The translations under genes and the position numbers were made by a program. A stretch of 64,000 bases of DNA from Thecamonas trahens ATCC 50062 (taxonomy: Eukaryota; Protista; Apusomonadida). Positions 6,667 to 12,197 of the stretch are shown one piece after another (position 1 is the first letter of the stretch; every line of letters begins with the position of its first letter). The stretch covers positions 121,853 to 185,852 of the forward strand of contig NW_013657635.1 of NCBI RefSeq assembly GCF_000142905.1, in the 5' to 3' direction. The notes under the pieces were generated by a model, which ran no database searches, had not been told where the DNA came from, and saw only the letters and a list, made by a program, of their open reading frames with translations.

Positions 6667-8601
6667 CTAGGGGTCAACGTCATCAACAAAGTAGCCCTCG
6701 GCGAGAGAGGCGATGTCGGACGAAGAGGCGGTGGCGATCGAGTGGTGTGACGAACGGTGCGATGAGTGGTGCGATGAGTGGTGCGACGAGTGTCGTATGT
6801 GAGTCGGGTGATGGACTTGCTTGGGAATGGCAAGTTGAATGTCGTGCGGTGACGAGGAGGGGCGGGCGTGGAGGTGAGCGCCAGTCGGGAGACGGGCACC
6901 GGTCGAGACTGCGCCCGAGGCTGCCGACGAGCCCGTGGTCGATGCGTGGGTCGATGACGACGATGCCGACGATGTCCATGAGACGGCCTCGGGATCGCGG
7001 CCGCGAACAAGAGCAAGCTTGCGCGACTGCGGACCAGGAAGGGCATGTGGGCCAAAGCCAAGAGCAGAGACATTGAGCAGCGAGAGCTGGGTCGACTGCT
7101 GGCGGGCGCGCGAGCGGAGACGGGCCTTGCGGTCGCGGGTGGATGCCGACGAGGCGGCGGCGGCTTCGCGCGATTGGACAGAGAGCACGTTGCCAAGGGC
7201 GTCACTGAGGGCGGCACCGGCGGCGGCATCGGTGGCAAGGTAGATAAGCGTCTGCTGCAGCTGCGGCGAAGCCGAGGCGAGGGCCGAGTCGGAGGCGAGG
7301 ACACAAAGGCCCCGGCGCATGATGCGGAGGAGAATCGAGTTGACCTCGGGATGCTGGAGGAGCTTCACCACGATGCCCATCAGCTGGGCAGACTCGGGGG
7401 TGAGGGCTGTCTCGCCAGGCGTGGCGGCCGAGGCTGATGGTGTCGGCGCAGGGCCTTGGCTCGAGATAATGGCGAGGAGCTCGGGGACTTTGGCCAGGTC
7501 GGAGGCCAGATCGGCGACCTGAGCCATGCCCTCGGACGAGAGCGAGCCGTCGCGCAGGCGGTCGTTGAGCGAGAGCCGCGGGCGGGAGCCAAAGCTCGAC
7601 TCGCCGTCGATGGAAAGAGATTGCCGAAGCTCGCGACGCGAGATGGATCGCTCTGAGAGAGCGTCATCGCGGCGCATCTGTGTGGGAGCGCCGCGGGCCT
7701 GGCGATGGAGCTTGCGCTCGTGGAGGCCGAGGACATCGAGGACGCCGGCGAGGCCTGCGGCGGGCGAAGAGTCAGAGACAGAGCGGGTCAGCCACTCGCC
7801 ATTCTGGCGGTACCTGTAGAGGCGATACATGGAGTAAAGGACAGCGCATCCAAGAATGGCGCGGACAACGGTGATGAGCGAGGTGAGGAGAGTGGAGAGG
7901 CGAATGTGGTTAAAGACGCAGCGGAAGAGCATGGCGTGGCGCTCCATCATCTGCCACACAAAGTTGCGGTCGCCACCGCACTGGAAAAAGTAAAAGGTGC
8001 CACCGTCGACGCCGCGCTGGTTGCCGATGATGGCGATGAACGAGTAGCGGAGCGAGATGGCGGCCATGTAGCAGAAGATGATGGCAACCTTAAAGTAGAG
8101 GAAGCGGTTGATCTGGACAATGAGGCCGGCGTTGGCCTTGAGGATGACGTCGTCGTCGACATCGTCGTCCATCTCCACAATGTCGTCTGCCCGGACACGA
8201 ATCTGGTTGATGTACGAGGACGAGATGGACATGAAGATGCCAGTGAGGAGGACGTTGAGGGCGGTGAAGATGGTCATGCTCAGGGTGTACTGCTTGATCT
8301 CGTTCTCGCAGTTGATGTTGACAAAGTCCTTGTTGAGGACAAAGTCCGAGAGCGCCCAGTTGACCTTCCCCAGACCGCCCACCGTCTCCAGCGAGACGTT
8401 TGCCGGTGGATACTTCCACAGCTCCTTGTCCGCCGCCGCGCTCCATGGCGAGCACTCGACGCCGTCGAGGACCAGCAGGCTGCCAAAGAGCAGTTCGAGG
8501 AGGGCGAGGAAGAGGAAGAGGAACCAGAGTCCGAGTTCAGAGTACGAGTGATGTCGCGTGGGCGTGAACAGCGCAGAGACGGTCGTCAGCAGCTGCGACA
8601 T
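6667..8601 (-). CDS. Four-TM membrane protein with pannexin/innexin/LRRC8-like cysteine pattern and long low-complexity C-tail
   Basis: 644-aa ORF with four hydrophobic segments. C50 and C98 lie in loop 1, C208 and C228 in loop 2. Confidence 0.6.
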   Translation of the reverse strand: MSQLLTTVSALFTPTRHHSYSELGLWFLFLFLALLELLFGSLLVLDGVECSPWSAAADKELWKYPPANVSLETVGGLGKVNWALSDFVLNKDFVNINCENEIKQYTLSMTIFTALNVLLTGIFMSISSSYINQIRVRADDIVEMDDDVDDDVILKANAGLIVQINRFLYFKVAIIFCYMAAISLRYSFIAIIGNQRGVDGGTFYFFQCGGDRNFVWQMMERHAMLFRCVFNHIRLSTLLTSLITVVRAILGCAVLYSMYRLYRYRQNGEWLTRSVSDSSPAAGLAGVLDVLGLHERKLHRQARGAPTQMRRDDALSERSISRRELRQSLSIDGESSFGSRPRLSLNDRLRDGSLSSEGMAQVADLASDLAKVPELLAIISSQGPAPTPSASAATPGETALTPESAQLMGIVVKLLQHPEVNSILLRIMRRGLCVLASDSALASASPQLQQTLIYLATDAAAGAALSDALGNVLSVQSREAAAASSASTRDRKARLRSRARQQSTQLSLLNVSALGFGPHALPGPQSRKLALVRGRDPEAVSWTSSASSSSTHASTTGSSAASGAVSTGARLPTGAHLHARPSSSPHDIQLAIPKQVHHPTHIRHSSHHSSHHSSHRSSHHSIATASSSDIASLAEGYFVDDVDP

Positions 8602-8865: not shown

Positions 8866-9621
8866 TTACGAGGCCTTGGCCTTGGCAGCCTTGCCAGCGA
8901 GATACTTGTTGCGGAAGAAGGAGACAAAGAGGATGACGAGAGCAACGACGTAGACGTTGTTGGCGACAATGGCCCAGTAGTGCAGGCCGACGTTGCAGGG
9001 GAGGCCGATAAAGTACGGGATGGATGAGGCGAGGCCGATGATGAACTGGGCAATCTGCATCGAGGTGAGGAGGACCGACCACTTGGGCCGGTAGCCAAAG
9101 CAAGTGAGAAAGTAGTAAAAGTACATGATGGTGTGGATGGTCGAGTTGAGGACAATAAAGATATAGATTGAGTCCGCCCGGGCTGCCGTGAGCACCCACG
9201 TGATCCACACCGCACCGACGTGGTGGAAGGTCTGCAGAAAGATCGGCTGCTTGCCCTTGAGAATGACGATCCACGTGTCGATAAACTCGTATGCCTTGGA
9301 CCAGAAAAAGTACGTCGCCAGCATTTCCAGCGGTGAGCCGTGGACGTCCATCAGGTCATGGCACGAGCCGTAGACGATGAACGACTTGTCCGGGTAGCCA
9401 GCGAGGAAGGTCACAGTCTTGACCAGCATGATGGCCGAGAAAATAGACATGCCAGCATTGTGCACGATGGAGAAGACCTTGAGTGGGCCGCGCGGCGCAG
9501 TCCAGCCCTTGAGCCCGGCATTCACCCCCAGATACACCACGGTGAGCAAAATGGGGAGGACCACAGGGAGCGAGGCCGACGGTTGGGTGAGCATCATCTT
9601 GGCCAGTTGCGAGAGCGACAT
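8866..9621 (-). CDS. ELO-family fatty acid elongase with Delta9-elongase-type QxxHH box
   Basis: Motifs SKAYEFIDT, LQTFHHVG, NSTIHTIMYFYY and TSMQIAQF. C-terminal KAAKAKAS resembles a dilysine ER signal. First ATG at 9621. Confidence 0.92.
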   Translation of the reverse strand: MSLSQLAKMMLTQPSASLPVVLPILLTVVYLGVNAGLKGWTAPRGPLKVFSIVHNAGMSIFSAIMLVKTVTFLAGYPDKSFIVYGSCHDLMDVHGSPLEMLATYFFWSKAYEFIDTWIVILKGKQPIFLQTFHHVGAVWITWVLTAARADSIYIFIVLNSTIHTIMYFYYFLTCFGYRPKWSVLLTSMQIAQFIIGLASSIPYFIGLPCNVGLHYWAIVANNVYVVALVILFVSFFRNKYLAGKAAKAKAS

Positions 9622-10625
9622 GGATGCGAGGCGGAGTGGGCGGGAGAGAGACGGGCGCTTGGCAGTCAATGCAACCTCTACCGACTATCAATGTCGTCTA
9701 GAGCAGTGTCTCCTTCTCTTCCTCCCCTCCTCAAGCCCGCTCTCTTGCCGTCCCTTGCCACGTCGTCAACTCTGTTGTGGGATGGGATCCCGGCAACGGC
9801 CGATTCTTTTTTCGTCCGTTTGCAGGAGTCCAGGCGGAGACCGCCATCGCTGCTCTCTGCGCGCTCTCTTGGACGGGGAAATGGCTAGTAAGGACATGAG
9901 GGGCAGGGTTAGAAGTTGAGCAGTGTAGTGGAATGGGTGGATGTGGTGGGGAGAACTTGATGGCATAGCGCGGGAGCGGAAATGGCAGTGTAGTCAGGCG
10001 TCTGGCTGGGGCAATCACGTGATTGTCGTTCTCAGCCACCTCGTCATCTTTACTCCGCGTCCAAGTTTCCACAGCCTCGCTGCTTTGCATCATTGGCCAA
10101 CCGTTCCAGGCTGAGCATGAGGACCAATCTATCCGCCTCGGCGCTGCTTTTATCCGCCTCGAACCTCGGTCTTTGCTGCTGCACTTGGCGGTCAGAATCA
10201 CGGGCGCAGAGCAGATCGGCGTAGCTGGACGCACAGCGACAGCACTACACATACAGCTCGATCAGTCTCACCAGAATTGAAAGACGCCGATATCGGAGCA
10301 AGAGTTGTAGACCTGGAGCCAGCCAGCCTGGAGCTCCATGATTGGAGCACTAGCGTGAGCAGGAGACGGATTGACGGCTTCCGACCATACCATGGCCATC
10401 TTTCTCTTCCCTTGGCAGCCTCTTGAATGTCCTCTTCTCCCTTGTGGCGCCTTCTTTCATCAAATCGCACTCGATGGCACTCGCGCGGCGTCTGCCGCCG
10501 CCAACCGCGGCCGTCGCTGGGCGGCCGTCCGTTGAACGGCGGCCGGTGGCAGCTGGCGACGACGACGGACAGAGCGACGGTCAAGCGGACGACGGCACCT
10601 CACCCAGCACCGACTTGTGGACGGC

Positions 10626-12197
10626 ATGTCGCGAGACGGGGTCGAGGCGGAGCAGAAGTTTGGGCTGGCGCATGGGCAGGCTGGCTTGAGGGCGAGCGGG
10701 AGCGAAGGAGCTGGGCTGTCTGGAGCGGTCTCTGTGAGCTGCGGCGGAGGGACGTACACGGGAGAGATGGTGGACGGGGCATTCCATGGCACGGGAACCT
10801 TTGTCTCCTCAGCCTTTACCTACACCGGCGGATGGGTTGCGGATGCCATGCATGGCCACGGCGATCTGGTCCTGGCTGATGGCTCGTCCTATGTTGGCTC
10901 CTTTGCCCACAACATGTACCACGGATCGGGCAAGCTGGTCCTCGCCGATGGTGAGTCGTATGACGGAGACTGGGTCCATCACGTCCGCTGTGGCCGCGGC
11001 ACGCTGGTCTTGCCAAACGGCGCTGGCTGGTACGCGGGATGCTGGCTCGATGGCAGCATGCACGGGCGCGGCGAGGCCCTGCTCGCCGATGGCTCGCGCT
11101 ACACCGGCGACTGGTACGCAGGCGTCATGCACGGCTCGGGCACAATTGTCGCTGCCGATGGCACCGCGTACGTGGGCAGCTTTGATAATGGTGTCCGTGC
11201 TGGCTCGGGCACCCTCACCGCCACGGGTCGGGTGTACTCGGGGGAGTGGGCGGCTGGCGCGCCCCATGGCACCGGCACGCTCATCTTTGACGACGGCCGC
11301 TCGTACGACGGCGAGTGGGACGCCGGCCGCCCGCACGGCAAAGGCGTTTTTCGCTTTGCCGATGGCGCGTCGTACTCGGGCCACTGGGAGCACGGCGTGC
11401 TCCTCGACGACGGCGCTGTCTTTGTCTCGGCCTCGGGCGAGCAGTATGCGCATGCCTGGGCACATCTCGCTGCAGGCTCTGCTGGGCCGCCACGCCCACC
11501 GCCGCCGCCAGAGACACATACATGGCTGCCGCAGGCGGCATCAGCTGGTAGTCTTGGCGGGCGTGCTCACCTCGCCGCTCCCGCCTCCGGACCCAAGCAG
11601 GGCGCTGTGCCCGCGTGTGCCGAGGCAGGCCAGCCGGCTGCTAGCCCTGGCCCAGCGCCTGACCCGGTCCCCGGTCACCATCGCGGACTCAACAGAGATG
11701 TTATGGACCTCGAAGAGGCCTCGCGCGGCCTCCCAGCGCCGTACACCTGGTACGATCCGGTTGTGCACTCGCTCTCGTGCAAGCTTATGGACCGCCGCGC
11801 CGCGCTGGCGGCCACACTTCGTGAGTACGACGTGTCGCGGACCCGCCACGGCTTCCTTCCGCTGGCGCGAGTCCGGCAGGCTCTGCGAAACATTGGCATT
11901 CGTCTCGATGCCGACGAGTACGACTTTGTGCTCGCCATGTTTGGTCCAAACTCGCAGTGGATCAACACAGACGACCTCGTCCGCTTTGTCACCACCGCCG
12001 AGCGCGAGTGGCACCGCCGCCACCCCCACCATGGACCGTCGCTCCATCAGCCACGCCGTCTTTCGCGCGCCGCTCGCCAAGCCCGCGCCGATGCCGCCGC
12101 ATTCACCGAGCTCGACGACGATGACTGCGCCAGCGACGACAGCGACTGCCTCGCAGACGTCGACGCCGAGTCTGGCCTCATGTTTGTCGAATTGTGA
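10626..12197 (+). CDS. MORN-repeat protein with C-terminal EF-hand-like region
   Basis: About 9-10 YxGxWxxxxxHGxG repeats. C-terminal YDVSRTRHGFLPLARVRQAL...INTDDLVRF is a degenerate EF-hand pair. Confidence 0.88.
   Translation: MSRDGVEAEQKFGLAHGQAGLRASGSEGAGLSGAVSVSCGGGTYTGEMVDGAFHGTGTFVSSAFTYTGGWVADAMHGHGDLVLADGSSYVGSFAHNMYHGSGKLVLADGESYDGDWVHHVRCGRGTLVLPNGAGWYAGCWLDGSMHGRGEALLADGSRYTGDWYAGVMHGSGTIVAADGTAYVGSFDNGVRAGSGTLTATGRVYSGEWAAGAPHGTGTLIFDDGRSYDGEWDAGRPHGKGVFRFADGASYSGHWEHGVLLDDGAVFVSASGEQYAHAWAHLAAGSAGPPRPPPPPETHTWLPQAASAGSLGGRAHLAAPASGPKQGAVPACAEAGQPAASPGPAPDPVPGHHRGLNRDVMDLEEASRGLPAPYTWYDPVVHSLSCKLMDRRAALAATLREYDVSRTRHGFLPLARVRQALRNIGIRLDADEYDFVLAMFGPNSQWINTDDLVRFVTTAEREWHRRHPHHGPSLHQPRRLSRAARQARADAAAFTELDDDDCASDDSDCLADVDAESGLMFVEL

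What the first reader, a model, noticed from the sequence alone, without database searches (positions are those of the whole stretch)
7790..8601. Pannexin/innexin/LRRC8-like large-pore channel candidate in a unicellular protist
Seen: short N-terminus, TM1, then GVEC50SP...DFVNINC98ENE, TM2, an acidic cytoplasmic loop, TM3, then FFQC208...LFRC228VF, and TM4 ending VLYSMYRLYR. An N-glycosylation sequon (NVS) lies in loop 1. Established: two Cys in each extracellular loop, in CxP...F/YVD/NxxC and FxC...F/YxC contexts, characterise pannexins, innexins and LRRC8, which are regarded as essentially animal families. Inference: this may be a pre-metazoan member (ATP-release or volume-regulated hemichannel) with an unrelated tail instead of LRRs. 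The TM2 proline motif (YFPY) is missing, so it is divergent.
Basis: partly seen in the sequence, partly recalled or inferred. Interest (0 to 1): 0.8.

Follow-up and report, generated by a model that had tools for sequence, protein, structure and literature searches.

The report
Pannexin/LRRC8-like channel candidate in Thecamonas
A gene of the free-living protist Thecamonas trahens encodes a four-helix membrane protein predicted to have the shape and paired-cysteine loops of the animal pannexin/innexin/LRRC8 large-pore channels, so this channel design may be older than animals.

Summary
Window 6667-8601 (-) is Thecamonas trahens AMSG_09137. It has four hydrophobic helices, Cys50/Cys98 in loop 1, Cys208/Cys228 in loop 2, an NVS sequon in loop 1, no proline in TM2, and a 370-residue tail with no known domain.

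It belongs to a very small family. A profile search of 1.84 billion protein representatives gave 8 hits: three T. trahens paralogues and a few genes from environmental eukaryotes. The groups share only 17-30% identity, yet all four loop cysteines and a loop-1 sequon are kept.

Sequence methods do not link it to animal channels: the Pfam scans (Innexin and Pannexin_like among all families) and PDB sequence searches found nothing. Evidence at fold level does:
- Language-model features of two paralogues 17% identical both point to Innexin/Pannexin/LRRC8 clusters.
- All 51 significant Foldseek hits of the AlphaFold2 model (pLDDT 70) are LRRC8 pore domains, best E 2e-5.
- The ESM Atlas shape search returns LRRC8 and pannexin-2 (TM 0.58-0.59).
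- The four cysteines lie on the same four structural elements as the disulfide-bonded cysteines of pannexin 2.

Most likely it is a glycosylated, non-junctional large-pore channel subunit. Homology versus convergence, assembly into a ring, and channel activity are all untested. Another unchecked first-reader note (s1-746489) proposes the same idea elsewhere in this genome.

The parts
6667..8601 (-). Whole coding region, 644 aa as a continuous ORF. It is T. trahens AMSG_09137; the NCBI model is 604 aa.
8566..8598 (-). Short N-terminal helix (residues 2-12), followed by a family-conserved P...Y-x-E motif. It is a candidate pore-lining N-terminal helix.
   Evidence: AF2 gives H2-12 at low pLDDT; family alignment. 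The role is inferred.
8467..8535 (-). TM1 (residues 23-45), with an acidic residue (E36) conserved in all family members.
8290..8466 (-). Extracellular loop 1 (residues 46-104). It holds a beta-strand at 48-52 carrying C50 in E-C-S-P, a variable low-confidence insert with sequon N68-V-S, and a helix from residue 91 carrying C98 in D-F-V-N-x-x-C-x-x-E-I-K.
8221..8289 (-). TM2 (residues 105-127), with invariant T113 and no proline.
8107..8220 (-). Short acidic cytoplasmic loop (residues 128-165). It is modelled as helical extensions of TM2 and TM3. The paralogue AMSG_00190 carries an insert of about 100 aa here.
8026..8106 (-). TM3 (residues 166-192), preceded by the R-F-x-x-F-K motif with invariant K171.
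7900..8025 (-). Extracellular loop 2 (residues 193-234). Two beta-strands, 205-209 and 225-230, carry C208 and C228, which lie 20 residues apart.
7828..7899 (-). TM4 (residues 235-258), with near-invariant R247. It is followed by Y-S-x-x-x-L-x-x-Y-R...W270.
6667..7827 (-). Cytoplasmic tail of about 385 residues, rich in Ser/Arg/Ala, with no Pfam domain. Several blocks are conserved with the 50%-identical environmental orthologue. It includes a His/Ser repeat at 6700-6819 that the NCBI model removes as an in-frame GT-AG intron.

Best explanation
AMSG_09137 is one of three T. trahens paralogues of a small, very divergent family. Its protomer is predicted to adopt the pannexin/innexin/LRRC8 large-pore-channel fold. 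The parts are a short N-terminal helix, four TM helices, and a compact extracellular cap. In that cap one strand from loop 1 joins two strands from loop 2, and a loop-1 helix leads into TM2. By analogy with pannexin 2, the cap would be locked by disulfides C50-C228 and C98-C208. Inferred mechanism: subunits assemble side by side into a ring of six to eight, with TM1 (conserved acidic residue), TM2 and the N-terminal helix lining a wide pore. The conserved loop-1 N-glycan would keep the channel non-junctional, as in vertebrate pannexins. It would then act as a plasma-membrane conduit for ions and small metabolites (ATP or osmolytes). The long Ser/Arg-rich cytoplasmic tail would gate or regulate it. 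Shown here: the sequence features, the family conservation and the predicted fold match. Inferred: disulfide pairing, orientation in the membrane, oligomer, pore and function.
For: The sequence shows four TM segments and a 2+2 cysteine pattern. These cysteines and the loop-1 sequon are kept across five subgroups at 17-30% identity. ESM Atlas features: 25 of 30 nearest clusters are Innexin PF00876, with LRRC8 Pannexin_like also present. The score is 0.93 with 202/256 shared features for the target, and 0.93 with 205/256 for the paralogue 17% identical to it. The AF2 model built on 15 sequences has pLDDT 69.9 and pTM 0.64, with strands at 48-52, 205-209 and 225-230 and a helix from residue 91, each carrying one loop cysteine. 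Foldseek against the PDB gave 51 hits at E<=1e-3, all LRRC8A/C/D pore domains, best 2.2e-5. The viral library served as a negative control and gave no hit at E<=1e-3. The Atlas shape search gave LRRC8B/C/D/E at TM 0.58 (220 residues aligned) and pannexin-2 at 0.59. VIA-align gave its longest alignments among natural membrane proteins to LRRC8C/A and Panx1: 212-223 residues, Z 8.4-11.0, 10-15% identity. In pannexin 2 the disulfides join the E1-beta strand (C81) to E2-beta2 (C279) and the EH1 helix (C99) to E2-beta1 (C259); its C3-C4 spacing is 20, and TM1/TM2 line the pore (PMC9984531). That is the same placement of cysteines on structural elements as here.
Against: No sequence-level link exists. 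Pfam gave nothing for the target, even at E<=10, or for nine members. Neither PF00876 nor PF12534 matched anywhere in the genome. PDB sequence and profile searches were blank. The exhaustive profile search reached no animal protein. The conserved TM2 proline of pannexins, innexins and LRRC8 is absent. The C1-C2 spacing is 48 residues, against 18 in pannexin 2. The cytoplasmic loop is far shorter than in LRRC8 or pannexin. The model has only medium confidence, and loop 1 residues 55-88 are below pLDDT 50. VIA Z-scores (about 9.5-11) do not rise above generic helical bundles (Z 13), and connexins score as well as LRRC8. AF2 and ESM learned from the same known proteins, so they are not fully independent witnesses.
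Confidence: 0.6

Rival explanations
1. It is an unrelated four-TM membrane protein with disulfide-stabilised loops, acting as a scaffold, adhesion or trafficking protein in the manner of tetraspanins, claudins, MARVEL or CD20. On this reading the predicted likeness to LRRC8/pannexin only reflects the generic pattern of 4 TM helices plus cysteine-bearing loops, which AF2 and ESM map onto the best-known examples.
For: There is no sequence homology to any channel family. VIA-align also lists the tetraspanin PRPH2 (Z 10.3), sarcospan-like chains (9.3-9.8), synaptogyrin (8.7) and CD20 (8.3), and designed bundles top the list. The model has only medium confidence.
Against: None of those families reaches Foldseek significance; all 51 significant hits are LRRC8. 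Alignments to them cover 144-164 residues, against 212-223 for LRRC8/pannexin. There is no tetraspanin CCG motif and no claudin W-GLW-C-C motif in the loops, and no Pfam hit to these families at E<=10. The placement of cysteines on strands and helix matches pannexin 2.
Confidence: 0.2
2. It truly has the large-pore-channel fold but does not form a large pore. It could be a small-conductance ion channel, an auxiliary subunit for one of its paralogues, or a receptor-like protein whose long tail does the signalling.
For: The cytoplasmic loop is minimal and the TM2 proline is missing. Three divergent paralogues in one genome could form heteromers, as LRRC8 subunits do. The tail makes up more than half of the protein and has blocks conserved with the orthologue.
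Against: Nothing speaks directly against it. A conserved acidic residue in TM1 and a conserved N-terminal helix are features expected of pore-lining elements.
Confidence: 0.12
3. It is closer to connexins than to pannexin/innexin/LRRC8. An alternative version is that it descends from a common ancestor of both groups.
For: Connexin 32/26/46/50 chains give VIA Z 10.5-11.7, equal to or slightly above LRRC8. The short cytoplasmic loop and compact protomer resemble connexins. The Atlas shape search lists connexin clusters at TM 0.48-0.56.
Against: Connexins carry three cysteines per loop, and this family has two. No connexin reaches Foldseek E<=1e-3. The language-model neighbours are Innexin, Pannexin and LRRC8, not Connexin. 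Connexin alignments are shorter, at 166-185 residues.
Confidence: 0.08

Closest known systems
LRRC8 / volume-regulated anion channel pore domain (Pfam Pannexin_like PF12534)
   Same: It is the best Foldseek match, and the only family at E<=1e-3. The Atlas shape search gives TM 0.58 over 220 residues. Shared features are four TM helices, an N-terminal helix and an extracellular strand/helix cap with cysteines.
   Different: There is no HMM match. There are no leucine-rich repeats, only a low-complexity tail. The intracellular loop is very short, and TM2 has no proline. LRRC8 is known only from chordates.
Pannexins / innexins (Pfam Innexin PF00876)
   Same: These are the nearest language-model neighbours for two paralogues. 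Both have two cysteines per loop on E1-beta, EH1, E2-beta1 and E2-beta2, with a C3-C4 spacing of 20 as in pannexin 2. Extracellular N-glycosylation is predicted, as in the non-junctional vertebrate pannexins (PMC9816575). VIA gives Z 8.4-9.5 over 209-223 residues.
   Different: There is no HMM match. The C1-C2 spacing is 48 against 18. The TM2 proline and the innexin YYQW motif are absent. There is no helical cytoplasmic domain of the pannexin type within residues 1-280. Innexins and pannexins are regarded as a metazoan synapomorphy (PMC9816575).
Unnexins of trypanosomatids (Unx1, PMC10400985)
   Same: They are a proposed large-pore channel of unicellular eukaryotes, with 4-TM topology and no detectable sequence homology to animal families.
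   Different: Unx1 has no extracellular cysteines, and only a YYQWV-like motif links it to innexins. No trypanosomatid protein was reached by the family profile. The Thecamonas family keeps the full 2+2 cysteine signature and belongs to a different eukaryotic supergroup.
Connexins (PF00029)
   Same: The overall protomer is similar, with VIA Z up to 11.7. The cytoplasmic loop is short.
   Different: Connexins have three cysteines per loop and this family has two. No connexin hit reaches Foldseek significance. Connexins are restricted to chordates.

Membership tests
Pannexin/Innexin (PF00876) | Match to the family profile above the gathering score | tested here: not met
   hmmscan at E<=10 gave no hit for the target or for 9 family members. 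PF00876 found nothing in the whole genome.
Pannexin/Innexin (PF00876) | Four TM helices with two conserved cysteines in each extracellular loop | tested here: met
   Hydropathy and cysteine positions. C50, C98, C208 and C228 are invariant in the family. The sequon conserved in loop 1 argues that this side is extracellular or lumenal.
Pannexin/Innexin (PF00876) | Cysteines placed on E1-beta, helix EH1, E2-beta1 and E2-beta2, forming C1-C4 and C2-C3 disulfides | tested here: inconclusive
   The placement on structural elements in the AF2 model matches pannexin 2. The bonds themselves need experiment.
Pannexin/Innexin (PF00876) | Conserved proline in TM2 (and the YYQW-type motif in innexins) | tested here: not met
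   Residues 105-127 contain no proline and no YYQW motif. The family has an invariant T113 instead.
Pannexin/Innexin/LRRC8 | Assembly of 6-8 subunits around a wide central pore | tested here: inconclusive
   The three-copy prediction returned 'no answer'. Larger assemblies cannot be tested with these tools.
LRRC8 (PF12534 + LRR) | Match to the Pannexin_like profile | tested here: not met
LRRC8 (PF12534 + LRR) | C-terminal leucine-rich repeat domain | tested here: not met
   No LRR or any other Pfam family matches the 644-aa protein.
LRRC8 (PF12534 + LRR) | Pore-domain fold | tested here: met
   Foldseek gave 51 of 51 significant hits to LRRC8, best E 2.2e-5. Atlas TM 0.58. VIA Z 10.6-11.3 over 182-219 residues. 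All of this rests on a predicted model of medium confidence.
Connexin (PF00029) | Three conserved cysteines in each extracellular loop | tested here: not met
   There are two cysteines per loop and no Pfam hit.
Unnexin (trypanosomatid Unx1) | Sequence relatedness to Unx1; no extracellular cysteines | tested here: not met
   The family profile found no trypanosomatid protein among 1.84 billion representatives. Unx1 lacks the extracellular cysteines (PMC10400985).
Tetraspanin / claudin | CCG motif in the large loop (tetraspanin), or W-GLW-C-C in loop 1 (claudin) | tested here: not met
   Neither motif is in the sequence. There is no Pfam hit at E<=10 and neither family is among the significant Foldseek hits.

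The most novel reading that the evidence does not exclude
The family is a true, extremely diverged homologue of the pannexin/innexin/LRRC8 superfamily. If so, the animal gap-junction and large-pore channel fold already existed in the common ancestor of apusomonads and opisthokonts as a glycosylated, non-junctional channel of single cells. It would later have been lost, or diverged beyond recognition, in fungi, choanoflagellates and other unicellular relatives of animals.
Probability: 0.45. Interest if true: 0.85.

Novelty: new variant of a known kind. Interest (0 to 1): 0.72.

Why it matters
Innexins and pannexins are described as absent from unicellular and colonial eukaryotes, and therefore as an animal innovation (PMC9816575). 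The only protist candidates so far, the trypanosomatid unnexins, lack the extracellular cysteines and any real sequence link (PMC10400985). Apusomonads are the sister group of opisthokonts. A family there with the full 2+2 cysteine signature and a predicted LRRC8/pannexin fold makes the origin of animal large-pore and gap-junction channels directly testable. The protein is a compact 270-residue core that could be expressed, recorded from and imaged. It would also show what such channels do in a free-living single cell, for example volume regulation or purinergic-type release.

Tried and rejected
- **Pfam.** Scanning the target, its first 270 residues and nine family members found only noise. 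The hits were Calcyon (E 0.39), APCDDC (0.016) and similar.
- **PDB sequence searches.** phmmer and a profile search were both blank at E<=10.
- **Pfam Innexin and Pannexin_like against the whole genome.** Nothing was found. Searches were rejected for an out-of-range E-value and were resent.
- **Word-based search with the full-length alignment A5.** This search was wasted.
- **First AF2 model, from 3 sequences.** It was too poor to use (pLDDT 56.8). Its Foldseek hits were all non-significant, although LRRC8 chains already recurred among them.
- **Homo-oligomer prediction (three copies of residues 1-275).** The verdict was 'no answer', score 0.00. It is evidence neither for nor against assembly.
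- **Foldseek against viral structures.** No hit reached E<=1e-3. I use this only as a negative control.
- **VIA-align Z-scores.** They do not separate channel families from generic helical bundles, so I do not count them as specific evidence.
- **Taxonomy of the environmental homologues.** Their neighbouring genes are only about 40% identical to T. trahens genes. They are eukaryotic, but I cannot say that they are apusomonads.
- **Profile-profile comparison with Innexin, Pannexin_like and Connexin.** No tool gave me sequences of those families, and I did not type any from memory, so this could not be run.
- **P0006 and P0007.** They look like two exons of one environmental gene. I kept them as separate rows and did not join them.

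Full report
**What is there.** The window is GC-rich eukaryotic DNA. The ORF at 6667-8601 on the minus strand encodes 644 aa. Its first 280 residues are 100% identical to the uncharacterised protein AMSG_09137 of Thecamonas trahens ATCC 50062, an apusomonad. The NCBI model is 604 aa. It removes 120 in-frame bases (6700-6819) with GT...AG ends inside a His/Ser repeat near the C-terminus. This does not touch the region in question. I used the continuous ORF by reference.

**Checking the observation.** A hydropathy scan gives four hydrophobic segments, at about 24-45, 105-127, 166-192 and 235-258.
- Cysteines are at 50 and 98 in the first loop and at 208 and 228 in the second, with further cysteines at 177 and 252 inside TM3 and TM4.
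- An NVS sequon is at N68, and TM2 has no proline.

**The family.**
- Pfam finds nothing in the protein, even at E<=10.
- PDB sequences give nothing.
- The word search found only the protein itself and one environmental orthologue: P0002, 50% identical over the core, from a marine metagenome contig with eukaryotic neighbour genes.
- A search of the window's own genome found a distant paralogue on contig C8, whose ORF was read out. It has 17% identity over the core in alignment A6.
- I built a profile from these three and ran it against 1.84 billion protein representatives. It returned only eight proteins:
  - the target and P0002;
  - P0003 (E 1e-44) and P0004 (7e-21);
  - P0005 (1.7e-4), which is a third T. 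trahens paralogue, AMSG_00190;
  - P0006 and P0007, which look like two exons of one environmental gene and were kept apart, not joined;
  - P0008.
- A family-profile search of the genome confirms exactly three paralogues, on contigs C45, C8 and C1.

The five subgroups share only 17-30% identity. The only invariant core positions among seven non-redundant full-length members are C50, C98, C208, C228, T113, K171, L261 and W270. An always-acidic residue sits in mid-TM1 (E36).

All seven members have an N-x-S/T sequon between C1 and C2. The C3-C4 distance is 19-20 residues in six of the seven. Conserved paired cysteines together with a conserved glycosylation site argue that both loops face the outside or the lumen. 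This gives the classic topology with N- and C-termini inside the cell.

**Is it pannexin/innexin/LRRC8-like?** By sequence alone, no.
- No member hits Innexin or Pannexin_like.
- Those two profiles find nothing anywhere in the genome.
- The family profile finds no PDB chain and no animal protein.

Three other lines of evidence point the other way.
1. **Language-model features.** Of the 30 nearest ESM Atlas clusters, 25 carry Innexin PF00876, and LRRC8 Pannexin_like clusters are also among the 30. The best score is 0.93 with 202 of 256 features shared. The C8 paralogue, only 17% identical, gives the same answer: 0.93, 205 features, 25 of 30.
2. **Predicted structure.**
   - AlphaFold2 with a 3-sequence alignment gave a poor model (pLDDT 56.8).
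   - With 15 family sequences it gave pLDDT 69.9 and pTM 0.64. The elements are helix 2-12, TM1 23-45, strand 48-52 (C50), a low-confidence insert at 55-88, one long helix 91-143 (C98 plus TM2), helix 150-195 (TM3), strands 205-209 (C208) and 225-230 (C228), and helix 233-267 (TM4).
   - Foldseek against the PDB gives 51 hits at E<=1e-3. Every one is an LRRC8A, C or D pore domain, and the best is 2.2e-5.
   - Even the poor first model already listed LRRC8 chains among its non-significant hits.
   - The viral library, used as a negative control, gives nothing at E<=1e-3.
3. **Atlas shape search.** It returns LRRC8B/E/D/C at TM 0.58 over 220 residues and pannexin-2 at 0.59, followed by connexins at 0.48-0.56.

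VIA-align is less discriminating. Designed four-helix bundles top the list at Z 13. Connexins score 10.5-11.7, LRRC8 9.5-11.3 and pannexins 8.4-9.5. However, the LRRC8 and pannexin alignments are the longest among natural membrane proteins, at 209-223 residues with 10-15% identity. Tetraspanin-like, CD20 and synaptogyrin chains align over only 144-164 residues, and none reaches Foldseek significance.

**Cysteine geometry.** In human pannexin 2, loop 1 contributes a strand (E1-beta, C81) and a helix (EH1, C99). Loop 2 contributes two strands (C259 and C279). The disulfides are C81-C279 and C99-C259, and TM1 and TM2 line the pore (PMC9984531). In the Thecamonas model the four conserved cysteines sit on exactly these four elements, in the same order, with the same C3-C4 spacing of 20. 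By analogy the bonds would be C50-C228 and C98-C208. I could not read the model coordinates, so this pairing is inferred.

**Differences from the animal families.**
- The C1-C2 spacing is 48 residues rather than 18, owing to a variable glycosylated insert.
- There is no TM2 proline.
- The cytoplasmic loop is very short and acidic.
- There is no LRR domain.
- The long low-complexity tail has a few blocks conserved with the orthologue.

**Mechanism proposed.** I propose a homo- or hetero-oligomeric ring of six to eight subunits that forms a non-junctional large-pore channel in the plasma membrane. The grounds, all inferred from the fold match, are:
- **Pore lining:** the conserved N-terminal helix, the acidic residue in TM1, and TM2 would line the pore.
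- **No docking:** the conserved loop-1 glycan would prevent two channels from docking, as reported for vertebrate pannexins (PMC9816575).
- **Regulation:** the Ser/Arg-rich tail is the obvious regulatory element.

A three-copy complex prediction gave 'no answer' and counts neither way.

**Comparison and novelty.** The literature search found no paper that mentions both Thecamonas and pannexin, and no report of such a family outside animals apart from the unnexins. Unnexins are trypanosomatid proteins without extracellular cysteines and without real sequence similarity to innexins (PMC10400985). They were not reached by this family's profile. Reviews state that innexins and pannexins are absent from unicellular eukaryotes (PMC9816575).

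The Thecamonas family fails the sequence-membership tests for PF00876 and PF12534, so I do not file it as a member. I file it as a new, sequence-distinct variant of the large-pore-channel kind. Whether it is a true homologue or convergent remains open. I put homology at about 45-50%.

**Other notes from the scan.** Another first-reader note (s1-746489) proposes the same idea for another piece of this genome. It may be one of the two paralogues, but I could not confirm which.

**Verdict.** Homology, assembly and function still need to be shown.

Noticed in passing
G000:C8:286204-287217 (+) = L003:1453-2856; G000:C1:426656-428359 (-) = L004: There are two distant paralogues of the target in the same genome. 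The C8 copy is 17% identical over the core. The C1 copy is AMSG_00190 (P0005); it carries an insert of about 100 aa in the cytoplasmic loop and has one TAG inside the genomic match, probably an intron. Both keep the four loop cysteines and the loop-1 sequon.
   Followed up: partly
window 6700-6819 (-): This is a 120-base in-frame stretch encoding a His/Ser repeat. The NCBI model removes it as a GT...AG intron, but it reads through without a stop. Either form may be real.
   Followed up: partly
window 8866-9669 (-): The neighbouring gene encodes a fatty-acid elongase of the ELO (GNS1/SUR4) family (Pfam ELO, E 7.8e-47).
   Followed up: no
window 10617-12197 (+): This gene encodes a protein with nine MORN repeats (Pfam MORN, E 8e-46) and a proline-rich, acidic C-terminal half.
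   Followed up: no
P0006/P0010/P0011 and P0007/P0012 (environmental contigs of 2.6 kb): The N-terminal and C-terminal halves of a close relative of the target are called as two separate proteins on the same small contigs. This suggests an intron between TM3 and the C3 strand in that organism. They were not joined.
   Followed up: no
L007 (17-kb metagenome scaffold) and L001 (8-kb marine contig): Family members P0004 and P0002 lie among ordinary eukaryotic genes (Hus1, PA28, Avl9, DAAF9). These neighbours are only about 40% identical to T. trahens genes, so the family may extend to apusomonads or other protists that are not yet sequenced.
   Followed up: partly
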